This document shows positions 1 through 50,619 of a stretch of DNA of 64,000 bases, in pieces (position 1 is the first letter of the stretch; every line of letters begins with the position of its first letter). A model generated the notes under the pieces. The model did not search any database. It had not been told where the DNA came from and saw nothing but the letters and a program-made list of their open reading frames with translations. Origin of the DNA: Glycera tridactyla (lineage: Eukaryota). Where the stretch lies: positions 96,782,001 to 96,846,000 of the forward strand of contig OZ286466.1 of assembly GCA_965644265.1 (NCBI GenBank), given 5' to 3'. The position numbers were made by a program, and so were the translations under genes.

Positions 1-870
1 TTCAACAGGAGGTGAAAATTCATGAAATTCACAGATCCCCCCCCCCCATGTTGGGGCCCCTTGTCGAGTAAAGAATCATAGAATACCGTAACAACAAAAC
101 ATACAGAAAGCATAGAAAATAGTATACAAGTATCACACTGTAATCGAAGATTCTACTTGCGTGACTTAACGACTTAGGTAGTTCAAAAAGGGCGCATACA
201 CAGGGTTAGTATTGAAGAATGAGATTCTGAAGGCTCTTATTAGAGACCAACCTCACATACTGTATGACTCTTTCATGCAAAAGGAGGTGAACATGAACTC
301 AATAACAACGATGATGAGTGTTTGTAATTACAGCGATGCTGAATGGGATCTTGTTAGAAAAATCATCTGCAATTTCGAGGCTCAAAATGCATTTGGTGCG
401 AGTATACCCCAGAGGGTGAGAGCCTCTTCATCCTGAGTCGTCCTTATCTCTTGATACTTTTTCATCTGACCTGGCTGGATATTAGGTCATGAATGTAATG
501 ATATACCTTTATAAATTTCATCAGATGGCGATGAAATGAAACTAGTCATCTATAACAATTATGTGTCAAATGCTATTATAATTTTTGTCCATTCAATGAG
601 TCACCTGGCAGAAATCTCTAGATGAGTGAAAGTGTATCCAATTTTCTGACCAATCTTCTCTTCTGAGTATATTGATTGAGGGCTTCCAACAAAGACCAAA
701 TGCTAAGATTTGGTTTCGGAAGATAAAACTGTGATGATAGTGTGTACTATAGTAGAAACTGTTTATTGTCACAATTTTATCTGTAAATTTCACTGATTTT
801 TGTCTGGTAAAACAATTAATCGGTCTGTTGAATCAGCCTGTTTATTCACGGACATGATGAAAATCTGTAC
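1..870. repeat. Unclassified repeat relic, paralogous to 21155-22945; serves as the empty-site reference for two insertions there
   Basis: Colinear identity with 21155-21561, 21966-22037 and 22553-22945 (e.g. both encode LYDxFMQKEVNMNSITTMMSVC); begins with a family-C fragment. Confidence 0.8.
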
Positions 871-1206
871 ATGATGCCTGTCCGTGTTCTGAGATAAATT
901 ATTCTCAATCTCAATCTCAATGAAAGGTACTGACCAAAACTCTCTATGAGTGTTCACATTCTACCAGAACATAGAAAAAATGAAAGGTCTAAATACAAGA
1001 ATGAAAAACATATTGCAAACACACGATTATCGTTTATGATTCCTGCCTTAGAACAATGTTTTTCTCAATAAAACCGACAATGTCGCGATTAACTTTTGTA
1101 TGTCCACATGGGAAAGCCCCAGACTGCTGGGGTGACTCGTTTTGTTATATGTGATGAATGAGAATAAAGTATCATCTGTCCATCATCTTGGTTTCTACTA
1201 GAAGAG

Positions 1207-1345
1207 ATGACAATGTTAAAGTATGCAGTCGAAACAATCAAAATGTTGAGGAAGGGCTGTTTTCTAGCAAAAACTGACATCGAAACTGCCTTCAGGCTTT
1301 TGCAAATTTGCAAACAAGAATACAGACTTATCGGATTCACTTTGT
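1207..1345 (+). pseudogene. DIRS/Ngaro reverse transcriptase fragment
   Basis: TIKMLRKGCFLAKTDIETAFRLLQI...EYRLIGF matches the KxDIxxAFRLLP motif seen in the other DIRS RTs in this window. Confidence 0.8.
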
Positions 1346-3119
1346 TTTGTTGGGGGTTTAACGTCACGTCAGCTCCATCTGGGCAATATTGTGACGCCCT
1401 CCTTCAGGGTTCCAAACGGAAGGTGAAAATATATGAAATTCATAGACACTCAAAGTGCCATTTCTGCGACGTGCACTTGGGAGGGCAGCAAAGCTCTTCA
1501 CTTGCTGTCAAGTTGCTGTTCTCAGTCAAATAAAGTTGAGAAGATTTCTCGCCGCACACGTAGCGGGCAAATTGAACTTGATTGTCCATCAGTCAATGCG
1601 GATCATAACACCTATATGGGATGGGGCTAACCGCCACGGTCAGCTTCGATCTTGCTACCAAATAAGCTACACCACTTAGAAAAGGTGGAGGAAACTCCTT
1701 TACGTGCCCATTAATGTGGTTTGTTTTGTTTGTTTGTTTGTTTGTTTAGATTTAACGTCCTTTCAACCACCCCTGGACATATCAGACTGTAATACCAATC
1801 TCAGTCACAGATGTGCTTGAGACCTTTGGTCCTAGCACCGATTCATGAAGCAAATCACTGGTTTCTCCTCGTGGCAGACAACATCAATAAAACTGTACAT
1901 GTCCTGGATTCACTGAATAATCAGGAGCGAGTCGAAAGATATCAAGACCTCTGGTGTATTTTCTTGTATTATAAGTGAGTTTCTCGAACGATTTCTTGAA
2001 GAAATCGTTCAAGTCACTGGCAGGCTATTGTTTGTTTGTTTGTTTGGGTTTAACGTCCTTTCAACCAACCTTGGTTATATCAGACTGATAAAGTGAAAAT
2101 GCTGGAGAAAAGGGGCCATCCCTACTCTTTGCGAAAGAGAGTGGTGGCTCTTCTATGTGCATACAGGACCAGACTCACATACACACGGCCAGCCTTCGAT
2201 ATCCCAGTGTGCATGCACTGGGTTTTGCCAAACCCTAATAATTCTACAAATACCAATAAAACGGTTGGAAAATGCTGTCGCAGGCTTCAAATGACAAAAT
2301 GACCTCGTTGACATGAATATAGTGAACATGATTGTGGCATATTCTATAGATGACGTATGTAACTGGTTGTAACCTGATACTCAATAACAATGTTTTTTAA
2401 AGCAAAGCGCAGCACAGGTTGAGCACTTATGTTCGCAGATTACGTAACAAATGTGTTCAATAAGAAACCGTTTGTTGTGTGTTTGTGTTCAACGTTCTCT
2501 CAATCTACTTGGGTTATATTCGATTGGAAACTGAAAATGCTGAATGAAAGAGGCATTAATGCCGGGGAGCCATCCCTACTCTTTGCGAGGGACAGGAGTG
2601 GTTTCTTTTACATGCATGCAGGAATGGACTCCTATATGTTTGATATGCTCAGGCTGCACATGAACAGAGGTAGGTATCCTGGGAATTTCCAAATCTTCTG
2701 TCTTTCTGGACAGTCTGGGAAGTTGTGATTGCAAGTAGAGAGAGGGGGGGGGGGCGCTAATCAGAGGTTGAGATTGTATTCTTAGGGGAAGGGGGAGGTT
2801 CGAGGATCAAGTCTGAGATTGAGATTAAAAAAAAGAAGAGATTGTGATGGAGGAGGAGTGCTGTACTGAGTTGTGTGTGAGTGGTTGTTGGCGTCTCATA
2901 CGTTAAGCTGATCAGTGAATATCTGGTAAATATCTGGTGTCCATCAGAGACTGCTACTTAAAAAACACAAACATTACATAGTTCGTTTTCTGTGTAGGAC
3001 ACGTTTATCCAGTGAGGATGTGTCATGTTTAGGGAGGTTGTTGGAGTCATTCATGATTTCAGGTTGAAACTCAATCTCAACATTACAGTTACACACCCTT
3101 TGCCATATGATACATAAAA

Positions 3120-3780
3120 TATGGAGATGGTTAGACTTTCAGGGAAATCACTGAAAAACTACATGGTGAGCATCCTGCTTCCCCTGTATGCCGCGAAGGC
3201 AAACGACTTGTTGGTTGCAACAACAAAAGAGAGGAGGTAGGGTGCTGTAAAGAGACTTCTAGGCAAGTCCTTGAAGAACAACATGGTAAGCATTCTGCCT
3301 TCTCCTGAAGGTGATCGACTTGTTGGTTGCAACAACAAAAAAGCGGAGGCGGGGTGCTGTGGAGAGAACTTGTATATTACTTGTAGAATGGAGTTGGTCC
3401 GACTACTCGGGAAGTCTCTAAAGAACCACATGGTCAGCATCCTGCTTTCTCCTGATGCAGTGAAGGCGATCAACTTGTTGATTGCAAAGAGGGGAGTATG
3501 ATGATGCAAAGACGTGCACGTATTCCCACGGCTAAGCAGCTAAAGACCACTAGACAGTAGCCAAGAATTGCGGAGGATCGCTGTGGGGTGCCCTGAGTTG
3601 ATATGCCCAGGAAGGGTCACAGCAACGGACATGCGGAAATATGCAGCTGTAGTAATGCAAATGACGGGGGAGAAGCAATGTTTGTTTGTTTGTTTGCAGC
3701 TGGCCGCTGATATTTTGAGAAATTGTAATCTACAATGTATTCAATTTTGGCATATGCAAACAAAACTAGATGCACTCAGG
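3120..3780 (+). pseudogene. Crypton-like tyrosine recombinase C-terminal half, copy 1
   Basis: LVRLLGKSLKNHMVSILLSPDAVKAINLLIAKRGV...LRRIAVGCPELICPGRVTATDMRKYAAVVMQ...LAADILR; resembles the RGKRGRKVPVLL...TSTKLRKHVAT...LADFLGH YR family of animal genomes (alignment from memory). Confidence 0.7.
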
Positions 3781-3960
3781 TGTTCAGGATGTAATTAATC
3801 ATTGTTGGCGTTTCCTACGAGAGAAAATTGCGTTTTAAAACTGAATGAGGATGACTAGATCTCTGCATCACTGATGCTGGCGCGTGCGTTGGAACTTCAG
3901 TTGGATTCTATTGGCGTGATGATGGTTTTTTTTTGTTTGGGTTTAACGTCCTTTCGACCT

Positions 3961-4078
3961 CGACGGCCCCCGGCAGGCAGTGACTCTTTTCTCCAGCATT
4001 TTCAGTTTTTTTTTCAGTCCGATATAACCCAAGTGGGTTTAAGTGACGTTAAACTTAAACAAACAAACAAACAAACAA
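3961..4078 (+). mobile_element. 5'-truncated family-A LINE 3' end in the rare plus orientation
   Basis: ...ttcagtccgatataacccaagtgggtttaagtgacgttaaactt(aaac)n; inserted into the hairpin of a minus-strand A2 copy; empty site near 7475. Confidence 0.88.
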
Positions 4079-5049
4079 CTTCCTATGGTCATATCGAACC
4101 GAAAATGCTGAATAAAAAAGGCACCGCTGCCAAGGGCCATCCTTACTCTTCCCTACAGCAGTGGTTCTTTAACGTGCAGCCTTTGTTGGCATGCACTGGA
4201 TTCAAACAGATGACATTCGAATGACTCGGCACAAACGCCACCATAAACTATCGATTTGATGAGGGATATCCGAAGATTTAACCCATGATGTTTGTTTGTT
4301 TGTTTGTTTGTGGTTTAGCATCCTTTCAACCACCGTTAGTTATATCAGACTGAAAAACTGAAAAAGCTGAAGAAAAGAGGCACTGCCGCCGGGGGCCATC
4401 CCTACTCTTTGCGAATGAAACATTCAATTTATATTAGCTTGCTTATAAAGAAAATAATTCATCCACCATATATCAAGATATCCTGATCTGACATGTGTTG
4501 TTCTTCCGAGGTCATGATACGAGAATTAAAGCAGCTGGTTTGCAAAAGTGTAATCCTATATTGGCGGGGGTCTTACATTTTCACATATTTGGCAGCTTCT
4601 TTGAAACAGATAGAATCCGAAGCGGAAAGTGTGAGCCGCAAAATTAACTTCATCATGAAGAACTTGGTTGGTTGGTTCTTGTTTAACGACACGTCAGCAC
4701 CACCTGGGCTACATTGTGATGCACATGCAATCGGGCATGGGTGGGATCTTCCAAGACTCCTCCTTCTGCGTCCCAAACGGAAGGTGAGAATGTATGAAGT
4801 TCAGACACTCAGCCATTTCCAACTACTGATTACCAGCACATAACCGGACAGCTGACTCACGTGATCTCCCAATATTGGAGTCTTCACCATCTGTGGTTTC
4901 GCTGTCGAAAATGTCTAATTAAATTACACATGTCATGTAATGTGGATTCCCGTAGACACCAAATAAGAACCACATGTACTCGATGACAGGAGAATAGACC
5001 TATTAGATGCAGGCACTCACCATAAAATCTGAGATACAGTTCGCAGCGA

Positions 5050-6058
5050 CAGGATCTGAATAAGTGGATGCAAAGTGACGCCATATTGGCTTATGCCGAT
5101 GACTCTGAAATGAACATGGGTCGTAATAAGGAAGGACACCCTAGCGGGCTTGGATATTCCGTTGTATACACCACCACGCTTAACATACGATATACAAAAT
5201 TGCCAAGTGTTCTTCGACAATTTCTTTACGTCCGTGACCCTGGTTGAGAAATTGCTGCACGTCGGTCTGTATGCATGTGGGACTATACGGGCCCTGAGAC
5301 TTCTTATGTGAAATTACCAATCAGAAACTTGCCCGCAGTGAGAGTGTAATCAAACCAAAAGGGCAGCTTGTTGTGTGCACTTGGATGGTTGGTTGGTTGG
5401 TTCCGGTTTAACTGCCTGTCAGCACCATCTGGGCTATGTTGTGACGCCCATGCAGTGGGCATGGGTGGGATTTTCCGAGACTCCTCCTTCTGGGTTCCAA
5501 ACGGAATGTGAAAATATATGAAATTCACAGACACTCAAAGTGCCATTTCTGCGACGTGCACTTGGGAGGGCAGTAAAGCTCTTCACTTGCTGTCAAGTTG
5601 ATGGTCACAGTCGAATAAAGTTGAGAAGATTTCTTGCCGTACACGTAGCGGGCCAATTGAACTTGATTGTCCATCAGTCATTACGGATTATAACACCAAT
5701 ATGGGTGGCGCTAACCGCCACGATCAGCTTCGATCTTGCTACCAAATAAGCTACACCACTAAGATATGGTTGAGGAAACTCCTTTATGTGCTCATCAATG
5801 TGGTTGGTTTTGTTTGTTTGTTTGTTCAGGTTTAACGTCCTTTCAACAATCCTTGGTTATATCAGACAGAAATACCAATCTCAGTTACAGATGTGCTTGA
5901 GACCTTTGGTCCTTGCGCCGATCTATGAAGCAAATCACTGGTTTCTCCTCGTGGCAGACAACATCAATAAAACGGTACATGTCCTGGATTCACTGAATAA
6001 TCAGGAGCGAGTCGAAAGATATCAGGACCTCTGGTGTATTTTCTTGTATCATAAGTGA
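5050..6058 (+). pseudogene. Ulp1/SENP (peptidase C48) protease relic, copy 2 (paralogues ~1470-1975 and ~8110-9560)
   Basis: LNKWMQSDAILAY (N-terminal WLxDxxIxAY-like motif) and LVLAPIYEANHWFLLVADNINKTVHVLDSL (catalytic His and Asp context); interrupted by tail insertions. Confidence 0.7.
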
Positions 6059-6772
6059 GGAGTTTCTTGAACAATTTCTTGAAGAAATCGTTCAAGTCAC
6101 TGGAAGGCTATTGTTTGTTTGTTTGGTTGGTTGGTTTAACGTCCTTTCAACCAACCTTGGTTATATCGGACTGATATAGTGAAAATGCTGGAGAAAAGGG
6201 GCCATCCCTACTCTTTGCGGAAGAGAGTGGTGGCTCTTCTATGTGCATACAGGACCAGACTCACATACACACGGCCAGCCTTCGATATCCCAGTGTGCGT
6301 GCACTGGGTTTTGCCAAACCCTCATAATTCTACAAATACCAATAGAACAGTTGGAAAATGCTGTCGCAGGCTTCAAATGACAAAATGACCTCGTTGACAT
6401 GAATATAGTGAACATGATTGTGGCATATTCTGTAGATGACGTGTGTAACTGGTTGTAACCTAATACTCAATAGCAATGCTTTTTTTGGAGCAAAGCGCAG
6501 CACAGGTTGAGCACTTATGAACGGCATTAGGTTCGGAGATTATGCAAGCAATGTGTTCAATCATAAACTGTTTGTTGTGTGTTTGTGGTCAACGTTCTCT
6601 CAATCTACTTGGGTTATATTGGACTGAAAACTGAAAATGCTGGAAAAAGAGGCATTGGTGCTGGGGACCGTCCCTACTCTTTGCGAGGGACAGCAGTGGT
6701 TTCTTTTACATGCATGCAGGAATGGACTCCTATATGTTTGATATGCTCAGGCTGCCATATGATACATAAAGT

Positions 6773-7310
6773 ATGGAGATGGTTAGTCTACCAGGGAAGT
6801 CACTCAAAAACTACATGGTGAGCATCCTGCTTCCCTTGTATGCCACGAAGGCAAACGACTTGTTGGTTGCAACAACAAAAAAGCGGAGGCAGGGTGCTGT
6901 GGAGAGAATTTGTATATTACTTGTAGAATGGAGTTGGTCCGACTACCAGGAAAGTCTCTGAAGAACCACATGGTCAGTATCCTGCTTTCTCCTGATGCAG
7001 TGAAGGCAATCAACTTGTTGATTGCAAAGAGGGGAGTTGGATGCCGCAAAGATAATGTGCACGTATTCCCACGGCTAAACAGCACAAGACCACTAGACAA
7101 TAGCCAAGAATTGCGGAGGATCGCTGTGGGGTGCCCTGAGTTGATATGCCCAGGAAGGATAACAGCAAGGGCATGCGGAAATATGCAGCGGTAGTAATGC
7201 AGATAACGGGGGGAGAAGCAAGCTGGCCGCTGATATTCTGAGACATTGTAATCTACAATGTATTCACTTTTAGCATATGCAAACAAAACTAGATGCACTC
7301 AGGTGTTCAG
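6773..7310 (+). pseudogene. Crypton-like tyrosine recombinase fragment, copy 2
   Basis: Same motifs as copy 1; frameshifted; lacks the middle internal repeat. Confidence 0.7.
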
Positions 7311-9851
7311 GATGTAATTAATCATTGTTGGTGTTTCCTACTAGAGAAATTGCGTTTCAAAACTGAGCGAGGATGACAAGATCTCTGCATTGCTGATGCT
7401 GGCGTGTGCGTTGGAACTTCAGTTGGATTCTATGGGCGTGATGATGGGGGTTTGTTTGTTTGGGTTTAACGTCCTTTCGACCTCCTATAGTCATATCGAA
7501 CCGAAAATGCTGAATAAAAGAGGCACCGCTGCCAAGGGCCATCCCTACTCTTCCCTACAGCAGTGCTTCTTTAACGTGCAGCCTTTGTTGGCATGCACTG
7601 GATTCAAACAGATGACATTCAAATGGCTCGGCACAAACGCCACCATAAACTATCGATTTGATGAGGGATATCCGAAGATTTAAACCAAGATGTTTGTTTG
7701 TTTGTTTGTTTGTTTGTGGTTTAGCGTCCTTTCAACCACCGTTAGTTATATCAGACTGAAAAACTGAAAACCTGAAGAAAAGAGGCACAGCCGCCGGGGG
7801 CCATCCCTACTCTTTGCGAATGAAACATTCAATTTATATTAGCTTGCTTATAAAGAAAATAATTCATCCACCATATATCAACATATCCTGATCTGACATG
7901 TGTTGTTCTTCCGAGGTCACGATACGAGAATTAAAGCAGCTGGTTTGCAAAAGTGTAATCCTATATTGGCGGGGGTCTTACATTTTCACATATTCGGCAG
8001 CTTCTTTGAAACAGATAGAATCCAAATAAGAACACGTACTCTATGACAGGAGAATAGACCTATTAGATGCGGGCACTCACCATAAAATCTGAGATACAGT
8101 TTGCAGCGACAGGATCTGAATAAGTGGATGCGAAGTGACGCCATATTGGCTTATGCCGATGACTGAAATGTACATGGGTCGTAATAAGGAAGGACACCCT
8201 AGCGGGCTTGGATATTCCGTTGTATACACCACCACGCTTCACATACGATATACAGAATTGCCAAGTGTTCTTTGACAATTTCTTTACGTCCGTGCCCCTG
8301 GTTGAGAAATTGCTGCACGTCGGTCTGTATGCATGTGGGACAATACGGGCCCTGAGACTTCTCATGTGAAATTACCAATCAGAAACTTGCCCGCGGTGAG
8401 AGTGTAATCAAACCAAAAGGGCAGCTTGTTGTGTGCACTTGGATGGTTGGTTGGTTGGTTCCGGTTTAACTGCCTGTCAGCACCATCTGGGCTATGTTGT
8501 GACGCCCATGCAGTGGGCATGGGCGGGATTTTCCGAGACTCCTCCTTCTGGGTTCCAAACGGAATGTGAAAATATATGAAATTCACAGACACTCAAAGTG
8601 CCATTTCTGCGACGTGCACTTGGGAGGGCAGTAAAGCTCTCCACTTGCTGTCAAGTTGATGATCTCAGCCAGATGAAGTTGAGAAGATTTCTCGCCGCAC
8701 ACGTAGCGAGCCAATTGAACTTGATTGTCCATCAGTCAATGCGGATCATAACACCTATATGGGATGGGGCTAACCCCCACAATCAGCTTCGATCTTGCTA
8801 CGAGATAAGCTACACCACTTAAAAAAGGTGGAGGAAACTCCTTTACGTGCCCATTAATGTGGTTTGTTTTGTTTGTTTGTTTGTTTAGATTTAACGTCCT
8901 TTCACCCACCCCTGGACATATCAGACTGTAATACCAATCTCAGTCACAGATGTGCTTCAGACCTTTGGTCCTTGCGCCGATTTAGACATCCATTAGCGTG
9001 ATTGTGTGCATGAATGTGCGAACAGATGTTTATTGTTTTGGATATGAATGTGAGTATAAATGTATATTGTGTTACTAGTGTTTTCCTCTTCTTGCATATG
9101 ATGTATCGCTTTCTCGCATATTTACGATTGATACAAATACCATATCTTCCAAAATATGTCTATGATTACACGGCACTACATCCAACGGACTGCGTAAGCA
9201 ATTAACACGACCTCTGGGGTCTATTTGTAATCATACTGGTATGACATCGGGCGAATAGATCTGTGACCAGATTTCACCTAGGCATGCGTACCCGCATGCA
9301 CACGTACTTCACCTACATGACATGTGTCACGAATGTACATACTTGATTGATTGATTCATTGTTTTGCTGTACTCCTGTTATACTTGTTCAAATGTCTTAC
9401 GCAATAAACAAATTCTTTATTCATGAAGCGAATCACTGGTTTCTCCTCGTGGCAGACAGCATAAATAAAACGGTACATGTCCTGGACTCGCTGAATAATC
9501 AGGAGCGAGTCGAAAGATATCAAGACCTCTGGTGGTACGTACATTTTCTTGTATCATAGGTGAGTTTCTTGAACAATTTCTTAAAGAAATCGTTCAAGTC
9601 ACTGGCAGGCTATTGTTTGTTTGTTTGGATTTAACGTCCTTTCAACCAACCTTGGTTATATCGGACTGATAAACTGAAAATGCTGGAGAAAAGGGGCCAT
9701 CCCTACTCTTTGCGAAAGAGAGTGGTGGTTCTTCTTTGTGCATACAGGACCAGACTCACATACACACGGCCAGCCTTTGATATCCCAGTGTGCATGCACT
9801 GGGGTTTGCCAAACCCTCATAATTCTACAAATACCAATAAAACAGTTAAGA

Positions 9852-10021
9852 TGGTTGGTTGGTTGGTTCTCCTTTAACGTCACGTCAGCACCGTCTGGGC
9901 TATATTGTGACGCCCATGCAATGGGCATGGGTGGGATCTTCCAAGACTCCTCCTTCTGGGTCCCCAACGGAATGTGAAATGATATGAAATTCACAGACAC
10001 GCAAGGTGCCATTTCAAAAGT
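9852..10021 (-). mobile_element. Full-length family-C short retroposon
   Basis: TSD aacagttaaga (9841-9851, 10022-10032); (GGTT)n tail; empty sites in copies 1 and 2 (~2262, ~6346). Confidence 0.92.
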
Positions 10022-10448
10022 AACAGTTAAGAAATGCTATCGCAGGCTTCAAATGACAAAATGACCTCGTTGACATGAATATAGTGAACATGATTGTGGC
10101 ATATTCTATAGATGACGTATGTCACTGGTTATAACCTAATACTCAATAGCAATGCTTTTTTTGGAGCAAAGCGCAGCACAGGTTGAGCACTCATGAACGG
10201 CATTAGGTTCAGAGATTATGCAACCAATGTGTTCAATCATAAACTGTTTGTTGTGTGTTTGTGGTCAACGTTCTTTCAATCTACTTGGGTTATATTGGAC
10301 TGAAAACTGAAAATGCTGAAAAAAGAGGCATTGGTGCTGGGGACCGTCCCTACTCTTTGCGAGGGACAGCAGTGGTTTCTTTTACATGCATGCAGGAATG
10401 GACCCCTATATGTTTGATATGCTCAGGCTGCCATATGATACATAAAGT

Positions 10449-37557: not shown

Positions 37558-37584
37558 TTATGCGTCTGTTGGTTTGATTTTGTT

Positions 37585-39469: not shown

Positions 39470-39726
39470 GGATGTTTATCTATGTATGTCAGCTGGTATG
39501 GTTGATAAGTGACCGGATCAAAGTAGGCCCGTGTTTCCCTGTGGCACCGCCCTGGTGGCATTATTTCCCCAAAGTGGTGGCATGTGCCTTGTTTGCCCGT
39601 GTGTTTGCAAATCAACGAGTTTGTTTTCATACAGATGATCTTGCACTTGTATCTATTATTAACAGCCAAACATCTAAGGACAAACATGTCATGAGAGTGG
39701 TCGGTTTTGGTATGTCTATGTGTTAA
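39470..39726 (+). pseudogene. DIRS RNase H fragment
   Basis: FANQRVCFHTDDLALVSIINSQTSKDKHVM. Confidence 0.75.
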
Positions 39727-40504: not shown

Positions 40505-41222
40505 GTGTCGATAAAGTTCATCAGCGATCGTGGCGATCCGAGACTCCTGCAAACGATCCCCATCGAAATGCTCGACCACCTGCTGGGACTTTTTTTTATT
40601 GATCTACGCAAATGCGCAAATGGTGAGTATGAACCAACTTCAATACGATCGTACAACAGCTGCATTCGAAAGCATCTGTCCGGAACCATAAATGGGGTGG
40701 ACGCCCAAAAGGACTTCCGGAATGCGGGAAAGTGCCAGTTCGCCAAACTGAAGGATCTAAAATCGAAGAGGAAGGGGAACATTCTAAACAAAGCCAAAGA
40801 ACTGAGTCCTAAAAATGAAGAACAGCTGGGAAGAGGGGGGCACAGGGGGACAAAATTGCAGAAGTGCTAGTAAATACCATATTGTTTCTTACAACCAAAC
40901 TATTGGGTCTCAGGGGTCAACACGAGAGTCGGCAGTTACAGATTGATGACTTGCGATTGATAGATGATGATGGGGAGGAGGGACCTCATGTTGAATTCAA
41001 GGAGTGCATTACCAAAACCTGGAATGGAACATGCAACATGCAGAGAGAGTTCACGCCAAAAATGTTTCGTAAATAGGAAAATCCGGCGCGCTGCCCAGTA
41101 CACTTGTTTCAGGTTTACCTGTCTCAAAGGCCCGCCGACTGCAAGACACAAGCTTTCTTTCTTGGTGTCAATGGTAATGCAAAGGCCAAGCAGTGGTTTC
41201 TTGACAGCCCTATGGGAGATTT
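40505..41222 (+). pseudogene. CryptonA-type (DUF3504/ZMYM-KCTD1-like) tyrosine recombinase relic
   Basis: LGLFFIDLRKCANGEYEPTSIRSY; LFLTTKLLGLRGQHESRQL; EFKECITKTWNG; PKMF; RCPVHLFQVYLSQRP; WFLDSPMG. Confidence 0.8.
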
Positions 41223-41900
41223 GTTCGTTTGTTTGTTTGTTTGAGTTTAACGTCACTTAAACCCGCTTGGGTTATATCGGACTGAAAAAACTGAAAATGC
41301 TGAAGAAGAGTCACTGCCTGCCGGGGGCCGTATTATCTACTCTTCCAGTACAATTACTAATTCAGCAGAACAGTTCCTGGAGAGGGTGGACACTATAATT
41401 GAATTAGAGAAGAGGCGGAATGCTCTCATAAATCAGCAAAACAATCTACTCATAAAACAACTCACGATTCAACAACAGCAGATTGATTTGCAGACTGGAC
41501 AGCTTTCATCCTGATGAGGTAAGTTATCGATGGATTAAATTCAACTTACAGTTATGTATCCAGGGAATGAGGAATAGGGGCATCCCACCCATGCCCATTA
41601 TACGGGCGTTTGTTTGTTTGTTTGAGTTTAACGTCACTTAAAACCGCATGGGTTATATCTGACTGAAAATGCTGAAGAAAAGTCACTGCCTGCCGGGGGC
41701 CGTCCCTACTCATTGCGAAAGACAGCAGTGGATCTTTAACGTGCGTAAAGGAAAAGGCTCCTAAATACACGGCCGGCATTTGATATCCCAGTCGGCATGC
41801 ACTGGGTTAATTAACACGTATAGTGGTCTCTTCTTGGAAGTTCCACTGAGCATGGAAAAGATTGAGACGGAATTCACCCCACTTAACGAATCTCTCTCAT

Positions 41901-41903
<3 letters not shown>

Positions 41904-41972
<69 letters not shown>
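41904..41972. repeat. (CA)n microsatellite
   Basis: Perfect dinucleotide run. Confidence 0.98.
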
Positions 41973-41974
<2 letters not shown>

Positions 41975-42019
41975 GAAAATAGCATAGTCTCTCTCTGATC
42001 ACTCATATTTCCTCCTTTC

Positions 42020-42800
42020 CCACAGGTTTCGAAGACAACTGGAAAACCTGCCAGATCCGAGATGTGAATTTTCCATGACCGACATGAAGAAGTTCACAGG
42101 GATCCTGATCCTGATGGGGACAAATAAGGTGCGCAGCACCGCTATGACTGGTCGCTCGATGAGAACATCGCTCAACCCGGTGTGAGGAAAACAAAGAGCA
42201 TGAATAGTTTCGTAAAAATAAAAGAGTACTTCCATGTGACAGATCTGCCGAGCCTCCACGATCCACAGAGAACTACTCACGTTTGTACAAAATTCAGGCC
42301 ACCATTGATGATATACCAGCCAATATGAAGCAGCATTTCATCATGGGGAAGCGAATGGCCATTGATGAGGCAATGGTGGCTTGGTGCGGGTGTTTAAGTT
42401 TGTAACAATACCTCCCCGCCACCTATCAAGAGACATCAAAATATGGTGTCGTTGCTGTTCAGAGTGTGGCTACATGGACCGATTCTTCATATATCTCGGA
42501 AAAGATTATGCTACCTCTGAGCACGGACTGGGGTATGACGTGGTAACCAGCTTCGCAGATGACATTTTGTAGTCGAATCATCAGATCTATTACGACTGTT
42601 TGGCAGTGTGAAACTGGCGGAGAGTCTGCTATCAAAATGTCTTTACAGCTGCGCAACCATCAGACAAGGTCGAAATGGGTTCCTCGCATAGCTATAAAAA
42701 ACGGAAAACAGAAATTGCAGCGAGGACAGGCTGGGTCTATGCAGAGAGGCAATTTGGTGGCGACACGGTGGATGGACCGCAAGGCAAGTCACCATGATTT
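42020..42800 (+). pseudogene. piggyBac transposase relic
   Basis: MKKFTGILILMG; AIDEAMVAW; IKIWCRCCSECGYMDRFFIYLGK; HGLGYDVV; GNLVATRWMDRK. Confidence 0.8.
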
Positions 42801-42999
42801 TTACCTTGTCTGATCCACATGTGTTTGACATAATAGATCAGGGTTCAAAAAAGTTAACAGCTTAGGAAATCGGCGTTTTACCAACAACCTGTTAAGACAG
42901 TTAACGGCTTATTGAGTTTTAGCGGGCTGTAGTCCGTTAACAGGTTACGGGAATAAAGATTGTTTTTTTTTTGGGGGGGGGGGGGATATTTTCGCTGAT

Positions 43000-45600
43000 A
43001 CGCGCCTCTCTTCCGGGTATTACTGTCAACATCCTATAGCAGACGAAAACATTCAAAATGGAGCCGATGCTAATTCCAAATCTGTTTTAAGTAATCTGCC
43101 AATTGCAAAGGAGTTGGTCAGCGAAGAAGTTTTGTTAGGTAGAATTGCTGGTCCCTTCGATTCTGTTCCCATCAATAGCATCTTGATTTCTCCACTTTCT
43201 CTTCAGCCAAAAAGTGAAACCGGAAAATATAGACTAATACATGACCTCGCCTCCCCTCACAACCAATCTTTGGTAAATAGTGGAATTCCTAAAGATAAAA
43301 CTCAAGTTTCGTACCAGTCCATCCAGTGCGCAGTAAATTTGATAAAGAAAGTTGGAAAAACTGTTACATGGTGAAATCAGATATTAAATCTGCCTCTAGA
43401 CTTCCTATCACTCCATTGGAGTATAGGCTTTTTGGCCTCAAATTGGACAATAAATATTATTTTGATAGATGCCTGGAAATGGGCTGCGCCAGCTCGTGCG
43501 CCTTATTTGAGTCTTTCTCCACCGCAGTCCATTGGATACTTACAAATAAGTTTGGAATCAATAACATAGCTCACTGTGTGGACGATTTCTTATTTATTGA
43601 AGAGTCTTTTGAAAGATGTCAACACTCTCTTGATGTATTTAAAAAGCTAGCTGATGTCATTGGTCTCCCGCTCTCTCCTGAGAAGACGACCGTCCCTAAT
43701 ACTGATATTGTTTTCTTGGGATTCGCGCTTTCTCCTGTATGGATGTCATGTTCTATTCCATCACCAAAAGTTTCCAAATATACTGTTGCTATTCAAGGTT
43801 TGGTTGGTTCTGGTTTAACGTCACGTCAGCACCATCTGGGCTATGTTGTGACGCCCATGCAATGGGCATGGGTGGGATCTTCTTGCAGTTGGACTAGTGT
43901 AACCTGAAACAAATGCAGCAAATAGTGGGTTGATTACAGTGGGCTTGCGCTGCAATCATCCCAGGGCGACCATTCTTACGCAGCTTAGTTGATAAGACAA
44001 AATTCCTGAGTAAGCCATATCATCGTATTGAATCAAACAATGAAGTGAAAGAGGACCTTCATTTATGGTTGAGCATCCTCAAGCATTACAATGGAGTGAG
44101 GTTGTTTTGGGCAGGACAACCATTTATTGATTCTCTACACGTGTTTACCGGCGCATTAGATCTGGCTGCTGGGGGGGGGGGGGGGGGGGTTCAATGGGAA
44201 ACATTGGTTTGTATTGCCATTCAATGTTGAATGGGAAGCGTTGCATATATCTGCTAGGGAATTTTTACCTATAGTTTTAGCGATGCACCTTGAATTAAGA
44301 GACAAACACCTCGTGGTGCATTGTGATTTTTTGTTTTGTTGGGGGGTTTGTTTGTTTTGTTTGTTTGTTTGTTTGAGGCTTAACGGCATGTATCAACCCA
44401 CAGGATTATGTATGCCGTGTGTTCCTGGTTAATGAAAGCTAGATGGTCTCTCCCCTGCAGACATCACTCTCACAAACCCTGAACACATGATGATGGGGAA
44501 CTCCCTGAAAAGTTGTCAAGTGGAAGTAGCTGATGTAGACACACCCCTACCAACTCTAACTCTACAAAAAAGACATATTGAACCTGATGATGGCATATCT
44601 AACTATGTAACTGGCTGGAAGCTAACACTCAAGCCTGATAGCTATGCTTTTTTTTACGCAAAGTGCAGTACTTGAAACAAGGAAAAGCATTAGGTTCGGA
44701 GAATACTCAAACAATGTCTTCAATTACGAACTGTCAACTTCAAACCAGCTTTACAATCATGGCTTGCCCTATGCTTGCAGTACAATGCCATCACACAACC
44801 TAGTAAACCTAGTCGCAGCCCTAGTAACCCAGAACTGGTGTGCCTGGTACCCGCGTTTTGCATAGTGACAATATCTGCTACAGGCAAACCATCAGCTACC
44901 TACACCTGAGACCATTTCACTGAAGAAATAAGAAATAGCTAAGAGGGATAGGAAAGAGGTCAAGAAAAAGAAATCTGGTGATAGTGCAATTTTGGTAGAA
45001 AATGCCTAAAGATAGATGATAGAAAATTTTGAAGGTATGTTTTCATTCAACCCCCCATTCCAAAAGATATTGAGAAGAGAAGGGATGACGCTACACCTAG
45101 GCCACATCATCCCCGATGGCAACACTTCAGAGTATAAGTCCCGCGCCCATTGGTGGCTGCCATCTATAGAGACCCTGGACTCCCACCCTACCTACTTGTT
45201 GGGGGGTTAACGTCACGTCAGCTCTATCTGTGCTATATTGTGACGCCCATGCAATGGGCATGGGTGGGATCATTCAAAGCATTGTGACAACATTGCGATT
45301 GTTGGGGTTATTAACAGGCAGACAACCAAAGACAGGGCTCTATTGACTCTTCTTAGGCAATTTGTTTTGACTAACCTATATTTCAATATTCTTGTCACTG
45401 CTATTCATATTCCTGGTTTATCCAATCAGGTTGCGAATGTTATTTCTTGCTTACGTATCAACTCTTCAAACGCGTATCGTTTCAGCTTGCACGGCAGTCC
45501 AGTATGTATCCCATCTCAACTAATGCCCATGAATTGCGGTGAGTGACCTTTTGCGTGGATCGCAAGCCATGTCTACTATAAAATCATATACATGTTAGTT
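43000..45600 (+). mobile_element. Degenerate DIRS/Ngaro RT-RNase H-YR start, interrupted by C and B copies
   Basis: EEVLLGRIAGPF, KYRLIHDLASP, VKSDIKSA, HCVDDFL, HCDNIAIVGVIN, HIPGLSNQVA. Confidence 0.88.
44346..45195 (-). mobile_element. Full-length family-B copy
   Basis: Same termini as 25221-26070. Confidence 0.88.
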
Positions 45601-46319
45601 TGCTTTGTTGGGGGTTTAACGTCACGTCAGCTCCATCTGTGCTATATTTTGACGCCCATGCAATGGACATGGGTGGGATCATTCAAGACTCCTCCTTCTG
45701 GGTCCCTAACAGAAGGCGAAAATTTATTAAATTCACAGACACTCAAGGTGTCACTGTGTCTGGAATGACCTTCAAAAATGTATTATTGAATTGAGTGGTA
45801 ACCATATGTCTACCTCTGAGTCCTGTATGGATTTCGCGTTTTATAGCATACAAAGCATCTGAGGGCTTAAGTGCTGCCTTGATTAGGCAATATTATTTAT
45901 GTTTTTTCATATGCATCGGTCGGTTACAATATTCCAGTCGACCTGCACTGGGCTCCCTCTTACGGTAGGCACCACCAATACTCGACGCCCCCTCGTCATC
46001 GCTGCCAGCCGCCGCCTCACCGCCCATGGCTAGCTCTCAAAACAACAATAATACTTCCAAATCCAGGGGCACACCCACTTCAAAGTCTAACGATCTGGCC
46101 TGACTGACAGCTACTCAGGCCCGCACGCACACGAGCCAAAGATCTGTCAGATTTGCTGAAAATGTCAATGTTGTCATTGGTATGTTGCAGGATGTCCAAG
46201 TCTTCGACCCTGCCCTTCCGTCATGGCGTCTTGCACGAAATCTTCGCGCAAAAGTGACTCAGACTGCAGCAGTTTGCTGACAACGACCGCATCCCGAGAT
46301 GTTAAGTCAGCCTGGAGAG

Positions 46320-49300
46320 GTTTGTTTGTTTGTTTGTTTGAAGTTTAACGACATGCATTAACCCTAGGGTTATGTATGCTGTGTGTTCCTGGTCAAGGAA
46401 AGCTTGTTTGTTTGTTGTGTAGATGTTCTCTCCCCTGCAGACATCACTCTCATGAACCCTGGTTGGTTGGTTGTGGTTTAACGTCACGTCAGCACCATCT
46501 GGGCTATATCGTGACGCCCATGCAATGGGCATGGGTGGGATCTTCCAAGACTCCTCCTTCTGGGTCCCAAACGGAAGGTGAAAATAACCCTGGACACAAG
46601 ATGATGGGGAACCTGAAAGGTTGTCAAATGGAAGTAGCTGACAGTTCAGAGACACCTCTACCTACTCTACAAAAAAGACAGATTGAACGTCACAAGGGCA
46701 CATCTAATTATGTAACTGGCTGGAAGCTAACACTCAAGCTTGATAGCTATGTTTTTTTTGTGCAAAGCACAGTACTTGCCACAAGGAAAAGCATTAGATT
46801 CGGAGAATACTCAATGTCTTCAATTACTAACTGTCAACTTCAAACCAGTTTTACAATCATGGCTTGCCCTATGCTTGCAGTACAATGTCATCACACAACC
46901 TAGTAAACCTAGTCGCAGCCCTAGTACTTGAGAACTGGTGTGCCTGGTACCCGCGTTTTGCATAGTGACAATATCTGCTACAGGCAAACTGTCAGCCACC
47001 TACACCTGAGACCATTTCACTGAAGAGATAAGAGCTTAGAGGGATAGGAAAAAGGTTAAGAAAAAGAAATCTGATGATAGTGCAAGGAGGTAGAAAATAC
47101 CTAAAGATAGTTGATAGAGAATTTTGAAGGTATGTTTTCATTCAACCCCCCGCTCCAAAAGATATTGAGAAGAAGAGAAGGGATGATGCTACACCAGGCC
47201 ACATTATGCCGGATGGCAACACTTCAGTAAAATTCCTGCGCCCATTGGTGGCTGCCATCTATAGAGACCCTGGACTCCCACCCTACCCACTTCCTGGTCA
47301 ATGAAAGCTAGATAGCTAGATGTTCTCCCCCCTGCAGACATCACTCACAAACCCAGGACATAAGATGATGGGTATGTTTGTTTGTTTGAGGTTTAACGGC
47401 ATCTATCAACCCACAGGATTATGTATGCCGTGTGTTCCTGGTCGATGAAAGCTAGATGTTCTCTCCCCTGCAATCATCACCTGAAAGGTTGTCAAGCGGA
47501 AGTAGCTGACAGTTATATATATGAAGAGTGGGTAGAGGTGTGTCTGAGCAGAAGTTGGAGTGATCGGTGGCGCTATTGATAATTTCCTCCTTTCTTCATC
47601 ACAAAAATCCCACCATTGAATTGAAATGCTCATACACTGGATATGGGTGGGGGGGGGGGATCATTTTGTTTTCGTCAGGGACCCAGACAAAAAGTGCAAA
47701 TTTATGAAATTCACATACACCATCAGTGTAATTTCTATTTATGTGCGTGCGTGCACACCCGAGCACGTGTGTTTTTGTTTGTTTGTTTGAGGCTTAACGG
47801 CATGTATCAACCCACAGGATAGGAAAAAATCGGACCTATGTTTTGGCAGAGCGTTAATACCACAACCATCATCTGTACAAGAAGCATCATACAAGCATCA
47901 TCGTTAACACAAAGTATCATAGCAGTTACTAGCATCTTCATCGGGTATTGTTTGGCGTGCCAAATGGTCGAAAAGGGTTTGTTTGTTTGTTTGTTTGTTT
48001 GAGGCTTAACAGCATGTATCAACCCACAGGATTATGTATGTAAGCTAGATGTTCTGTCCCCTGCAGACAAACCCTAAACACCAGATGATGGAGAACCTGA
48101 AAGGTTGTAAGTGGAAGTAGCTGACAGTTTATATATATATATGCAGGTAGAGGTTTGTTTGTTTGTTTGTTTGAGGCTTAACGGCATGTATCAACCCACA
48201 GGATTATGTATGCCGTGTGTTCCTGGTTAATGAAAGCTAGATGGTCTCTCCCCTGCAGACATCACTCTCACAAACCCTGAACACAAGATGATGGGGTACT
48301 CCCTGAAAGGTTGTCAAGTGGAAGTGGCTGATGGTTCAGACACACCCCTACCAACTCTAACTCTACAAAAAAAAGACATATTGAACCTGATGATGGCATA
48401 TCTAACTATGTAACTGGCTGGAAGCTAACACTCAAGCCTGATAGCTATGCTTTTTTTTTGGAAGCTTAACGGCATGTATCAACCCACAGGATTATGTATG
48501 CCGTGTGTTCCTGGTTAATGAAAGCTAGATGGTCTCTCCCCGGCAGACATCACTCTCACAAACCCTGAACACAAGATGATTGGGAACCTGAAAGGTTGTC
48601 AAGTGGAAGTAGCTGATGGTTCAGACACTCCTCTACCAACTCTACAAAACAGACATATTGAACCTGATGATAGCATATCTAACAGAAAACAGCTGACTGC
48701 TGACGAGTCGTCCCTATAAAAAGAAATACCATGTCTCTGCATCACAACACCGGATAAGATCAAAATTCATTACTTTTGTTTCTTTGTTTGAGGTTTAACG
48801 GCATGTAGCAACCCTAGGATTCAGTCTGCCATGTGTTCCTGGTTGTAATGAGAGCTAGATGTTCTGTCCCCTGCAGACAAACCCTAAACACCAGATGATG
48901 GAGAACCTGAAAGGTTGTAAGTGGAAGTAGCTGACAGTTTATATATATATATATATATATGCAGGTAGAGGTTTGTTTGTTTGTTTGTTTGAGTCTTAAC
49001 GGCATGTATCAACCCACAGGATTATGTATGCCGTGTGTTCCTGGTTAATGAGAGCTAGATGGTCTCTCCCCTGCAGACATCACTCTCACAAACCCTGAAC
49101 ACAGGATGATGGGGAACCTGAAAGGTTGTCAAGTGGAAGTAGCTGATGGTTCAGACACACCCCTACCAACTCTAACTCTACAAAAAAGACATATTGAACC
49201 TGATGATGGCATATCTAACTATGTAACTGGCTGGAAGCTAACATTCAAGCCTGATAGCTATGCTTTTTTTTAACGCAAAGTGCAGTACTTGAAACAAGGA

Positions 49301-49796
49301 AATGCATTAGGTTCGGAGAATACTCAAACAATGTCTTCAATTACGAACTGTCAACTTCAAACCAGTTTTACAATCATGGCTTGCCCTAGTAAACCTAGTC
49401 ACAGCGCTAGTAACCCAGAACTGGTGTGCCTGGTACCCGCGTTTTGCATAGTGACAATATCTGCTACAGGCAAACCATCAGCCACCCACACCTGAGACCA
49501 TTTCACTGAAGAGATAAGAAATAGCTTAGAGGGATAGGAAAGAGGTCAAGAAAAAGAAATCTGGTGATAGTGCAATTTTGGTAGAAAATGCCTAAAGATA
49601 GATGATAGAAAATTTTTAAGGTATGTTTTCATTCAACCCCCCCCCCCCCCCCCCCCCATTCCAAGAGATATTGAGAAGAGAAGGGATGATGCTACACCTA
49701 GGCCACATCATCCCTGATGGCAACACTTCAGAGTAAAAGTCCCACGCCCATTGGTGGTTGCCATCTATAGAGACCCTGGACTCCCACCCTACCCAC
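46320..49796 (-). repeat. Head-to-tail stack of ~9 family-B copies and fragments, including full-length 46320-47290 and 48973-49796
   Basis: Repeated gagg(c/t)ttaacggcatg tails; TSD atgcaggtagaggt (48959-48972, 49797-49810). Confidence 0.88.
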
Positions 49797-50619
49797 ATGC
49801 AGGTAGAGGTGTGTTTGAACAGAAGTTGGAGTGATCGATGGCGGTATTGATAATTTCCTCCTTTCTACATTAACGAAATCCCGTCAAGTGAATTGAAATG
49901 TTCATGCACTGGACTTCCGGGAGAGGGGGGAAAATTTTGTTTTCTTCAGGGACCCTGACAAAAAGGGAAAATTTATGAAAATCACATACACCATCAGTGT
50001 AATTTCTATTCATGTGCGTGCGTGCGTGCATGCTCTCGTTTAACGTCACACCAGCGACACTTGTATGAGAGTGGATTCGACATTCCTGGGAACTCTGACA
50101 AAATGACGTCCACAGAGAAATACTATATAACTCATTTATTGACACACAGTGATCAACATACTACTATTACGTGGCCAAGGAATAGCTAGGAGGTATTTGG
50201 TAGCATAAGTTCCCCCCTAAGGTTCTGAGTTCTCCTGCAGAAATCCTTGCTTATATTATCAATCTTGCTACCTTCAGCCCCTCCTCCTAGGCTACGCTCG
50301 TTGAACCCCAATCCATACTGCCCCTCTCTTGATTGGCTCTTTGCTCTCGCTTATCTTGAGCTGCTTTCACCGGTTTACTCGATCCCTTCGTGTGTCGGTT
50401 GTAACCATTGCTTACCCATATGCAGTATAGTGACCTCTCACTCCCGATGTTCAATATTCCCGATTTCCCGACATGACACTATGTGCTATGCTGTGACGTC
50501 CATGCAATCTTGTGTCGCTATTGTGACGTCATGCGTCTGACAGAATGACATCATCTTTATTCATACTGGCGGCAAAGATGTAGCGGTGTTCAAAGTACAA
50601 ATATACACACAATATATCG

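What the first reader, a model, noticed from the sequence alone, without database searches (positions are those of the whole stretch)
1..50050. Locus-wide strand polarity: LINE-system inserts almost all minus, every other TE relic plus
Seen: by hand count about 60 tail junctions ((GTTT/GGTT)n + (G/C/A)TTAACG) lie on the minus strand, against only two complete plus-strand tails (3961-4078, 21562-21965). Roughly 45-50 remain independent after collapsing the triplication. In the same interval every recognisable non-LINE coding relic is on plus: seven DIRS/Ngaro pieces, Ulp1-YR, CryptonA, two pogo pieces, hAT, Myb, Harbinger, piggyBac. Copy-specific young inserts (9852, 11076) keep the bias, so it persisted over time. 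The eight TSD junctions I read share no clear target consensus, so sequence specificity does not obviously explain it. Established: uni-strand piRNA clusters such as Drosophila flamenco accumulate co-oriented TE fragments; the antisense bias of LINEs in introns is normally much weaker. Inference: either a uni-strand piRNA-cluster-like trap, or a TPRT machine that nicks only one strand here (transcription- or fork-directed). The two opposite polarities by TE class are what make it unusual.
Basis: partly seen in the sequence, partly recalled or inferred. Interest (0 to 1): 0.8.

Follow-up and report, generated by a model that had tools for sequence, protein, structure and literature searches.

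The report
One-way block of jumping-gene copies
In a 50-kb stretch of this marine animal's genome, about 45-50 separate insertions of one LINE/SINE system all point the same way and only two point the other way, while every other kind of jumping-gene relic points the opposite way; the pattern is real but its cause (most likely one-directional transcription, or else replication) could not be tested here.

Summary
The tail-end motif GNCGTTAA occurs 47 times on the minus strand and 2 times on plus, against 3.7 expected by chance. BLAST with window-derived elements gives 62 minus and 2 plus loci within 1-50 kb. After collapsing a tandem triplication (1398-12345) and smaller duplications, at least 27 independent minus insertions remain, and realistically 45-50 (p 1.6e-6 to 1.6e-11).

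Families A, A2, B and C have different bodies. They share a 3' hairpin, a CGTTAA motif and a microsatellite tail, and they belong to one APE-RT-RNase H LINE that sits on minus at 14.5-18.9 kb.

Pfam scans run per strand find only LINE domains on minus. On plus they find only non-LINE relics (piggyBac, two DIRS, Harbinger, Ulp1, Myb, a Crypton-like domain), about 6-8 independent elements. The LINE system covers 41% of the block and 10% beyond about 50 kb.

The cause remains open. No usable RNA data exist, and skew, CpG and substitution asymmetry told nothing. Both plus copies are among the six datable young insertions (p 0.014-0.037), which hints at a filter acting after insertion.

First readers of this scan noted the same whole-window co-orientation on at least seven other pieces of this genome (unverified). 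It is therefore probably a genome-wide domain property and not a special locus.

The parts
1357..50050 (-). Co-oriented block. All but two copies of the LINE system (families A, A2, B, C and variants) lie on minus. The system covers 40.6% of 1-50 kb. The left edge may lie outside the window.
14492..18862 (-). Longest copy of the autonomous LINE, with its ORF broken into several pieces. APE endonuclease 17058-17777, RT 15430-16759, RNase H 14724-15455. Its last 195 nt are family A, followed by an (AAAC)5 tail at 14492-14511.
   Evidence: Pfam; BLAST
12802..13758 (-). 5'-truncated LINE copy. Its RNase H region (12860-13382) is 97.5% identical to 14926-15448, but it ends in the B-type 3' module (12827-12864) plus a tail.
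33909..34119 (-). Family A unit of 195 nt plus an (AAAC)4 tail. It equals the 3' end of the LINE (99% identity).
25221..26071 (-). Family C full-length copy (835 nt plus tail). Other long copies lie at 44346-45196, 46586-47291 and 48971-49796.
9841..10021 (-). Family B insertion present only in triplication unit 3. Empty sites at about 2259 and 6345. TSD AACAGTTAAGA.
11071..11396 (-). 5'-truncated LINE/A insertion present only in unit 3. Empty sites at 3759 and 7282. 99.3% identical to the LINE 3' end.
22041..22504 (-). LINE/A insertion absent from the paralogous segment 413-478. It is flanked by a 46-bp target duplication (21992-22037 = 22507-22552).
27186..27295 (-). Family B insertion absent from the paralogous segment at 41558-41582.
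3960..4080 (+). Exception 1: a 5'-truncated family A copy on plus, present only in triplication unit 1 (empty sites at 7482 and 11596).
21562..21966 (+). Exception 2: a 5'-truncated family C copy on plus with a (CAAA)6 tail, absent from the paralogous site at 411-413. TSD CCCA.
1398..12345 (.). Direct tandem triplication (U1 1398-4952, U2 4953-8015, U3 8016-12345; 90-97% identity). It multiplies nine ancestral minus copies.
30854..33939 (+). DIRS-type relic. RT piece at 32159-32632, tyrosine recombinase at 33313-33939.
43299..43904 (+). Second DIRS-type RT relic, 51% identical to 32159-32632 and with no similarity to the LINE RT.
35884..37161 (+). Harbinger transposase, an uninterrupted 426-aa ORF (DDE_Tnp_4, E 3.5e-31).
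22931..23323 (+). Myb/SANT-like relic.
5602..5832 (+). piggyBac transposase piece, with its likely paralogues in units 1 and 3 (placed by position, not scanned one by one). Two further piggyBac pieces and a DUF3504 (Crypton-like) piece lie on plus somewhere in 38-50 kb. Two Peptidase_C48 pieces lie on plus somewhere in 1-18 kb.
50014..50050 (-). Last minus-strand tail of the block: the same GTGACGTTAAAC end but with a (GCAC)n tail. Element density drops fourfold to the right of it.
51357..53055 (.). Just outside the block the rule no longer holds: a DIRS-type RT relic on minus (51357-51581) and a family C copy on plus (52753-53055).

Best explanation
SHOWN. The block was built by many separate target-primed reverse transcription events of a single LINE system. 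The LINE encodes an APE endonuclease, an RT and an RNase H. Its dependants A, A2, B and C share only a 3' hairpin that closes on G-CGTTAA, followed by a short microsatellite tail.

INFERRED. The orientation is imposed by a long-lasting strand asymmetry of the block itself, not by target sequence and not by duplication. I think the most likely asymmetry is one-directional Pol II transcription of the plus strand across at least 50 kb in germ-line cells, ending or starting near 50 kb. The unit could be a very long intron, a long non-coding unit or a piRNA-precursor-type unit. Copies whose first-strand synthesis starts on the transcribed strand would end up sense, and these would be aborted (as transcription-coupled repair does for human L1) or lost afterwards. 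Only copies antisense to the transcript, that is minus copies, would accumulate.

The opposite polarity of the other TE classes would be a second, separate consequence of the same transcription unit. This account does not really explain that polarity.
For: Independent insertions are shown by different flanks, different 5' truncation points (195 to about 4350 nt), TSDs and empty paralogous sites.

One machine is indicated by the shared 3' module. G-CGTTAA is invariant across families, and the hairpin arms differ between families yet still pair: GUCAC/GUGAC in B, GGCAU/AUGCC in C, GUCC/GGAC in A2. The LINE itself carries the A-type or the B-type end.

The bias is equally extreme in all families: A and A2 about 25:1, B about 13:0, C about 12:1. 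It holds for old copies (74-85% identity) and young ones (97-99%), so the cause is persistent.

Density and orientation change together at about 50 kb: 40.6% against 9.6% coverage, and mixed orientations beyond. That is what the edge of a transcription unit would give, and a replication fork would not.

Both plus copies are among the 6 datable young insertions (p 0.014-0.037), as expected if sense copies are removed with time.

Human L1 shows an antisense bias in genes that arises partly during insertion through transcription-coupled repair (PMC5717806).

Unverified notes describe same-strand copies of a roughly 200-base element spread through the introns of a giant gene of this genome, and whole-window co-orientation on either strand elsewhere.
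Against: There is no RNA evidence. The unique parts of the locus are absent from all four runs laid, and those runs are contigs without strand information.

No host exon was found in 64 kb by Pfam on ORFs of 60 aa or more.

After masking the elements, the residual skew is weak: GC skew +0.039 in the block against -0.029 outside. The 226 private substitutions show no complementary asymmetry. CpG o/e is about 0.6 on both sides of the boundary.

Known intronic antisense biases of LINEs are below about 2:1, not 20:1 or more.

Non-LINE elements sense to the proposed transcript (6-8 to 0) is the opposite of what is usual for LTR-like elements in genes.

Splice-acceptor-like motifs on the sense strand exist in A and A2 only, not in B, C or the LINE, so there is no common harmful signal apart from the tail.
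Confidence: 0.4

Rival explanations
1. Uni-strand piRNA cluster acting as a trap. The block is the template of a long single-stranded piRNA precursor read on the plus strand. Antisense insertions of the currently active LINE system are kept because they yield silencing piRNAs.
For: The block is at least 50 kb, gene-poor and 41% LINE system plus nested relics of at least six other TE families. It is about 96% co-oriented and has a sharp edge. The elements are abundant and present in a polyA metatranscriptome, so they are expressed somewhere. The number of windows flagged so far in this genome (about 9 of 565) would fit the small genome share that clusters usually take (unverified notes).
Against: No small-RNA or strand data exist. 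All other TE classes lie sense to the proposed precursor, which a trap does not predict. A trap selects for insertions but does not by itself remove sense ones, so 45-50:2 is more extreme than flamenco (about 85% antisense, from my own knowledge). The same bias is reported inside the introns of an ordinary giant gene (unverified).
Confidence: 0.2
2. Replication-coupled TPRT. The LINE endonuclease/RT uses only one template strand relative to the moving fork (for example the lagging-strand template). The block is replicated in one direction in the germ line, so the orientation of copies records fork direction.
For: The bias is shared by all families that use this one machine and is not tied to their body sequences. 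Domains of either polarity are reported across the genome (unverified). No target consensus is seen. Human L1 has a weak lagging-strand-template preference (my own knowledge, not checked here).
Against: It does not explain the fourfold drop in density at 50 kb or the co-orientation of DNA transposons, DIRS and Crypton relics. Two of the six datable young insertions are on plus. No compositional or substitution asymmetry was found. The known effect in L1 is only a few per cent, not 96%.
Confidence: 0.2
3. Majority rule through instability of inverted repeats. In a very dense array, a copy inserted opposite to its neighbours forms close inverted repeats that are deleted, so whichever orientation came first takes over.
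For: Self-similarity in the block is almost purely direct: 990 direct against 103 inverted HSPs. It stays so after masking the LINE system: 54 against 4. Both plus copies are young. Domains of either polarity would arise at random.
Against: Families A, B and C share only about 30 nt, so inverted pairs between families would be harmless, yet all families agree in orientation. Copies of the same family are mostly 1-3 kb apart. The plus A copy survives 17 bp from a minus A2 copy. The idea does not explain the opposite polarity of the other classes.
Confidence: 0.07
4. Artefact of duplication. A few ancestral minus copies and plus relics were multiplied by direct segmental duplications.
For: A direct triplication (1398-12345) turns 9 ancestral copies into 24 loci. 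Smaller direct duplications exist: 43-867 with 21192-22940, and 26912-27180 with 41332-41558. Three piggyBac pieces are best read as paralogues, from their positions in the three units.
Against: After masking the elements, only about 2 kb outside the triplication is self-similar. Flank clustering still leaves at least 27 distinct tailed junctions, and about 45-50 by BLAST. Copies differ in truncation point, age and TSD.
Confidence: 0.03

Closest known systems
Uni-strand piRNA clusters such as Drosophila flamenco (PMC10643416)
   Same: A TE-rich, gene-poor block of tens of kb holding nested fragments of many families, most pointing one way, with a sharp edge.
   Different: piRNA production and a precursor transcript are untested here. 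In this block only one LINE system follows the rule and all other TE classes lie the other way. The bias (about 96%) is stronger. Similar blocks seem common in this genome.
Antisense bias of L1 and LTR elements inside genes, partly set at insertion by transcription-coupled repair (PMC5717806; PMC3088655; PMC1794541)
   Same: Retroelement orientation is tied to the direction of transcription. The cause is a mixture of an insertion-stage filter and a later filter.
   Different: No enclosing gene or transcript is shown here. The magnitude is at least 20:1, against roughly 2:1 or less for L1 (my own knowledge). Here other TE classes show the reverse polarity.
Stringent LINE/SINE partnerships that share a 3' stem-loop and a short-repeat tail (eel UnaL2/UnaSINE1, zebrafish ZfL2; my own knowledge)
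   Same: An autonomous APE-RT LINE and several non-autonomous families share a conserved 3' hairpin and a microsatellite tail. They show 5' truncation and TSDs.
   Different: This LINE also carries RNase H. The same LINE body occurs with two different 3' modules (A-type and B-type). The tail unit differs by family: AAAC, AACC, GCAC, AATC. No orientation domains have been described for those systems.
Replication-linked retrotransposition (weak lagging-strand-template preference of human L1; strong one for mobile group II introns, e.g. PMC8914252)
   Same: It would give strand-coherent insertions over a stretch replicated in one direction, for every family that uses the same machine.
   Different: For LINEs the known effect is small. 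Here it would have to be nearly absolute, and it leaves the density edge and the other TE classes unexplained.

Membership tests
Uni-strand piRNA cluster | Abundant 24-32-nt, 1U-biased small RNAs that map to one strand of the locus | not testable with these tools
   No small-RNA run was offered. The run index uses 31-letter words, which small RNAs cannot fill.
Uni-strand piRNA cluster | A long single-stranded precursor transcript across the locus from a defined start | tested here: inconclusive
   Four runs were laid on 44501-50500. Only the repeated element parts are covered, the unique spacers have zero depth, and contigs carry no strand.
Uni-strand piRNA cluster | TE fragments of several families nested together and mostly in one orientation | tested here: inconclusive
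   Met for the LINE system (62 minus against 2 plus loci). All non-LINE relics lie the opposite way, so 'all TEs antisense' does not hold.
Stringent LINE with dependent non-autonomous families | An autonomous element that encodes an endonuclease and a reverse transcriptase | tested here: met
   Exo_endo_phos_2 E 3e-22, RVT_1 E 3e-16 and RNase_H E 1e-9 to 4e-13, collinear on minus at 14.7-17.8 kb.
Stringent LINE with dependent non-autonomous families | Dependants share the LINE's 3' end (hairpin plus short-repeat tail) | tested here: met
   Family A is the last 195 nt of the LINE (99%). A B-type end sits on a second LINE copy. G-CGTTAA is invariant in 13 ends. Hairpins were predicted in all four families, with z from -1.5 to -3.0, so each is weak taken alone. 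RNAalifold on the cross-family alignment found no consensus structure, because the 5' arms are misaligned.
Stringent LINE with dependent non-autonomous families | Hallmarks of TPRT: variable 5' truncation and target-site duplications | tested here: met
   Copy lengths run from 195 to about 4350 nt with a common 3' end. TSDs of 4-46 bp were read against empty paralogous sites.
Intronic antisense bias of retroelements | The copies lie inside a transcription unit and are antisense to it | not testable with these tools
   No exon, annotation or stranded RNA is available for this genome.
Replication-fork-coupled insertion | Orientation follows fork direction | not testable with these tools
   Only proxies could be tried. 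Residual GC skew is +0.039 against -0.029, and 226 private substitutions show no complementary asymmetry. Both are uninformative.

The most novel reading that the evidence does not exclude
In this animal a stringent LINE system is coupled almost absolutely (about 96%) to a directional chromosomal process, either the replication fork or the transcribing polymerase. Its tens of thousands of copies would then form strand-coherent domains of 50 kb or more across the whole genome. The orientation of these copies would be a fossil map of fork or transcription direction in the germ line. The opposite polarity of DNA transposons, DIRS and Crypton relics would mean that a second, mirror-image rule acts on other TE classes in the same domains.
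Probability: 0.2. Interest if true: 0.85.

Novelty: new variant of a known kind. Interest (0 to 1): 0.6.

Why it matters
If orientation domains of this strength cover the genome, they are far beyond the intronic or replication-linked biases known for LINEs. They would offer a sequence-only readout of a directional germ-line process (transcription units, piRNA precursors or fork direction) in a non-model marine invertebrate. They would also provide a natural system for asking whether LINE orientation bias is set at insertion or by later loss. The mirror polarity of other TE classes has no ready explanation. If it is only a long intron or an ordinary piRNA cluster, the block is still a clean, well-delimited example outside insects and vertebrates.

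Tried and rejected
1. Duplication as the cause. Rejected after the three-unit alignment, self-BLAST with the elements masked, and flank clustering.

2. Homing into existing tails or elements. Only about 5 of about 45 tails are followed by another LINE-system element, although the system covers 41% of the block, so there is no excess.

3. Target-sequence specificity. No consensus appears at 34 flanks or at six exact junctions. The six nicked ends are purine-rich, but the block has almost no purine skew.

4. A harmful signal on the sense strand. Splice-acceptor-like tracts (the TTTTCAG repeats) are sense-specific in A and A2 only. B, C and the LINE are symmetric, and poly(A) signals are symmetric too.

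5. Strand asymmetry of composition, CpG depletion and private substitutions. These were weak or absent.

6. RNA evidence. The single run search gave only contig-type runs with shares of 0.14 or less. Laying them showed repeat pieces only.

7. More DNA of this genome. There was no exact gene on record. The best protein relatives are only 69% (Harbinger) and 63% (LINE endonuclease) identical, from bivalves, annelids and echinoderms. The one metagenome hit, L001, is a chance 20-mer.

8. Rfam and ARAGORN. No RNA family and no tRNA-like head was found.

9. Literature search for the tail motifs. It found nothing relevant.

10. PDB sequence searches of RT pieces. They gave nothing.

11. Limits on the Pfam work.

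Full report
WHAT IS THERE

The window is animal DNA, 43% G+C, with one N gap at 57936-58311 that was left untouched. Tandem Repeats Finder and a regular expression show that (GTTT)n and (GGTT)n runs, which are (AAAC)n and (AACC)n tails of minus-strand elements, occur 48-49 times. All lie between 1719 and 48990. The complementary form occurs only twice convincingly, at 4057-4079 and 21943-21966. The end motif GNCGTTAA occurs 47 times on minus and twice on plus. Both strands together would give 3.7 +/- 1.8 by chance, and no shuffle out of 100 reached 49. Self-similarity of the window is almost purely direct: 990 direct against 103 inverted HSPs.

THE ELEMENTS

The minus strand at 14.5-18.9 kb holds a LINE with an APE endonuclease (17058-17777), an RT (15430-16759) and an RNase H (14724-15455). 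Its reading frame is broken in several places.

"Family A" is not a separate SINE body. Its 195 nt are the 3' end of this LINE, and several "A" copies are simply LINE copies truncated at 292, 427, 442, 457 or 684 nt. A discrete 195-nt form also exists.

A second LINE fragment (12822-13758) is 97.5% identical in the RNase H region but ends in the B-type module.

Families A, A2, B, C and a variant at 50014-50050 have unrelated bodies. They share an invariant G-CGTTAA preceded by a nested hairpin. The outer arms of that hairpin differ between families yet still pair: GUCAC/GUGAC in B, GGCAU/AUGCC in C, GUCC/GGAC in A2. A short microsatellite follows, and its unit differs by family. Each hairpin prediction is weak taken alone (z from -1.5 to -3.0). 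RNAalifold on the cross-family alignment gave no consensus structure, because the 5' arms are misaligned.

This is the anatomy of a stringent LINE with dependent families. No tRNA-like head and no Rfam family is present.

THE COUNT

BLAST with window-derived queries gives these hit counts: A 33 minus to 1 plus, A2 35:1, B 19:2, C 19:2. The two plus B hits are 26-28-nt self-complementary hairpin matches, and one of the plus C hits lies at 52.7 kb, outside the block. The A and A2 queries hit largely the same loci, so those two counts overlap. Merging gives 62 minus and 2 plus loci in 1-50 kb.

A direct tandem triplication (U1 1398-4952, U2 4953-8015, U3 8016-12345) multiplies nine ancestral copies. 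Smaller direct duplications are 43-867 with 21192-22940 and 26912-27180 with 41332-41558.

After masking the elements, only about 2 kb outside the triplication is self-similar. Clustering 100-nt flanks of the exact tailed junctions still leaves 27 groups. The binomial p is 1.6e-6 for 27:2 and 1.6e-11 for 45:2.

The LINE system covers 40.6% of 1-50 kb and 9.6% of 50-64 kb.

OTHER TE CLASSES

I translated every stop-to-stop ORF of 62 aa or more in 1-50.1 kb (147 on plus, 112 on minus) and scanned each strand's set separately against Pfam.
- Plus gave piggyBac (5 pieces), RVT_1 (2), Peptidase_C48 (2), Myb (2), Harbinger, tyrosine recombinase and DUF3504.
- Minus gave only LINE domains.

The plus RT at 43299-43904 is DIRS-type: 51% identical to the DIRS RT at 32159-32632, with no similarity to the LINE RT. 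One piggyBac piece sits at 5602-5832, inside the triplicated unit. The three pieces in 1-22 kb are therefore most likely one relic.

I count about 6-8 independent non-LINE relics, all on plus (p 0.016-0.004). This part of the claim holds but rests on small numbers. Immediately outside the block a DIRS-type relic lies on minus (51357-51581) and a C copy lies on plus (52753-53055).

AGE AND TIMING

Minus copies range from 74% to 99% identity to the reference copies, so the bias lasted a long time.

Six insertions can be dated as younger than a local duplication, because an empty paralogous site exists for each:
- Minus: 9841-10021, 11071-11396, 22041-22504, 27186-27295.
- Plus: 3960-4080, 21562-21966.

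Both plus copies of the block therefore fall in this young class. The probability of that under a constant bias is 0.014 with 47 events and 0.037 with 29. This is a hint, not proof, that plus copies do insert and are later lost.

Ranking by sequence divergence alone does not show the effect. By hand, two plus copies among about 20 copies of 90% identity or more, out of about 45, gives p about 0.19.

MECHANISM TESTS THAT GAVE NOTHING

- No target consensus was found.
- There is no excess of insertion into other copies of the system.
- Residual GC skew after masking is +0.039 in the block and -0.029 outside. That is small, and it is confounded by the plus-strand coding relics.
- CpG o/e is about 0.6 on both sides.
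- The 226 private substitutions show no complementary asymmetry.
- Splice-acceptor-like tracts are sense-specific only in A and A2.
- Public runs: eleven were listed, all kept as contigs, with shares of 0.14 or less. Four were laid on 44501-50500. They cover only element pieces, at very high depth in two runs, and the elements are present in a polyA metatranscriptome. None covers the unique spacers. The families are therefore abundant and expressed somewhere, but nothing is learnt about this locus.
- The genome is not in the protein collections. The best relatives are 69% and 63% identical, from bivalves, annelids and echinoderms. The metagenome pattern hit is a chance 20-mer.

CONTEXT FROM THE SCAN

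These are unverified first-reader notes. The same whole-window co-orientation of these retroposons, on plus in some pieces and minus in others, was noted on at least seven other pieces of this genome: s1-312415, s1-320801, s1-335620, s1-322451, s1-333365, s1-320821 and s1-320750. One follow-up describes same-strand copies of a roughly 200-base element spread through the introns of a giant gene (s1-320755).

This makes a single special locus unlikely and a genome-wide domain property likely.

READING

Shown:
- A real, statistically overwhelming co-orientation produced by many independent insertions.
- One LINE machine behind all the families.
- Persistence of the bias over time.
- A joint edge of density and orientation near 50 kb.
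- Opposite polarity of the few other TE relics.

Inferred: a lasting strand asymmetry of the block. I favour one-directional plus-strand transcription with an antisense-only outcome for this LINE system (confidence 0.4). The reasons are that density and orientation end together, that young plus copies exist, and that a transcription-coupled filter at insertion is documented for human L1 (PMC5717806).

The rivals are an adaptive piRNA trap (0.2), replication-coupled TPRT (0.2), inverted-repeat instability (0.07) and duplication (0.03). No model explains well why the other TE classes are all sense to the proposed transcript. That remains the most unusual feature.

VERDICT

In kind it is a new variant of known orientation-biased TE blocks. 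It is of moderate to high interest because of its strength, its recurrence and the mirror polarity by class.

Noticed in passing
window 12822-13382 versus 14512-15448: The same LINE body (97.5% identical over the RNase H region) occurs with two different 3' ends: a 414-nt A-type end in one copy and a 38-nt B-type end in the other. Either there are two subfamilies with swapped 3' modules, or the RT switched from a B RNA to a LINE RNA during insertion.
   Followed up: partly
window 21992-22037 and 22507-22552: The LINE/A insertion at 22041-22504 is flanked by a perfect 46-bp target-site duplication. That is much longer than the 4-11 bp seen at other junctions.
   Followed up: partly
window 50014-50050 and 52389-52430: Retroposon ends with the same GACGTTAAAC motif carry other tail repeats, (GCAC)n and (AATC)n. 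The tail unit is therefore family-specific: AAAC, AACC, GCAC or AATC.
   Followed up: no
window 35152-37600: A Harbinger transposase ORF of 426 aa is uninterrupted (best relative 69% identical). It sits in a 51-55% G+C island flanked on both sides by degenerate 10-11-bp tandem repeats (35206-35771 and 37243-37374). It is possibly a young, intact element.
   Followed up: partly
window 1398-12345: A direct tandem triplication of a unit of about 3.06 kb (90-97% identity). It contains two copy-specific segments of unknown nature, 2655-3100 in unit 1 and 8984-9422 in unit 3.
   Followed up: partly
window 51357-53055: Right outside the block both rules flip once each: a DIRS-type RT relic on minus and a family C copy on plus. 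This is too few to call a mirrored domain.
   Followed up: partly
window 19544-19849 (+): An ORF with a weak, sub-threshold SGNH/GDSL-lipase-like match (E 0.005). Some LINE ORF1 proteins carry such an esterase domain. If it were real, it would be a plus-strand LINE piece of another family.
   Followed up: no
L001 (Ga0078972_1000035, 4511-4530): The only metagenome contig with the 20-nt A-tail pattern shows no further similarity to the element or to the window. It is a chance match.
   Followed up: yes
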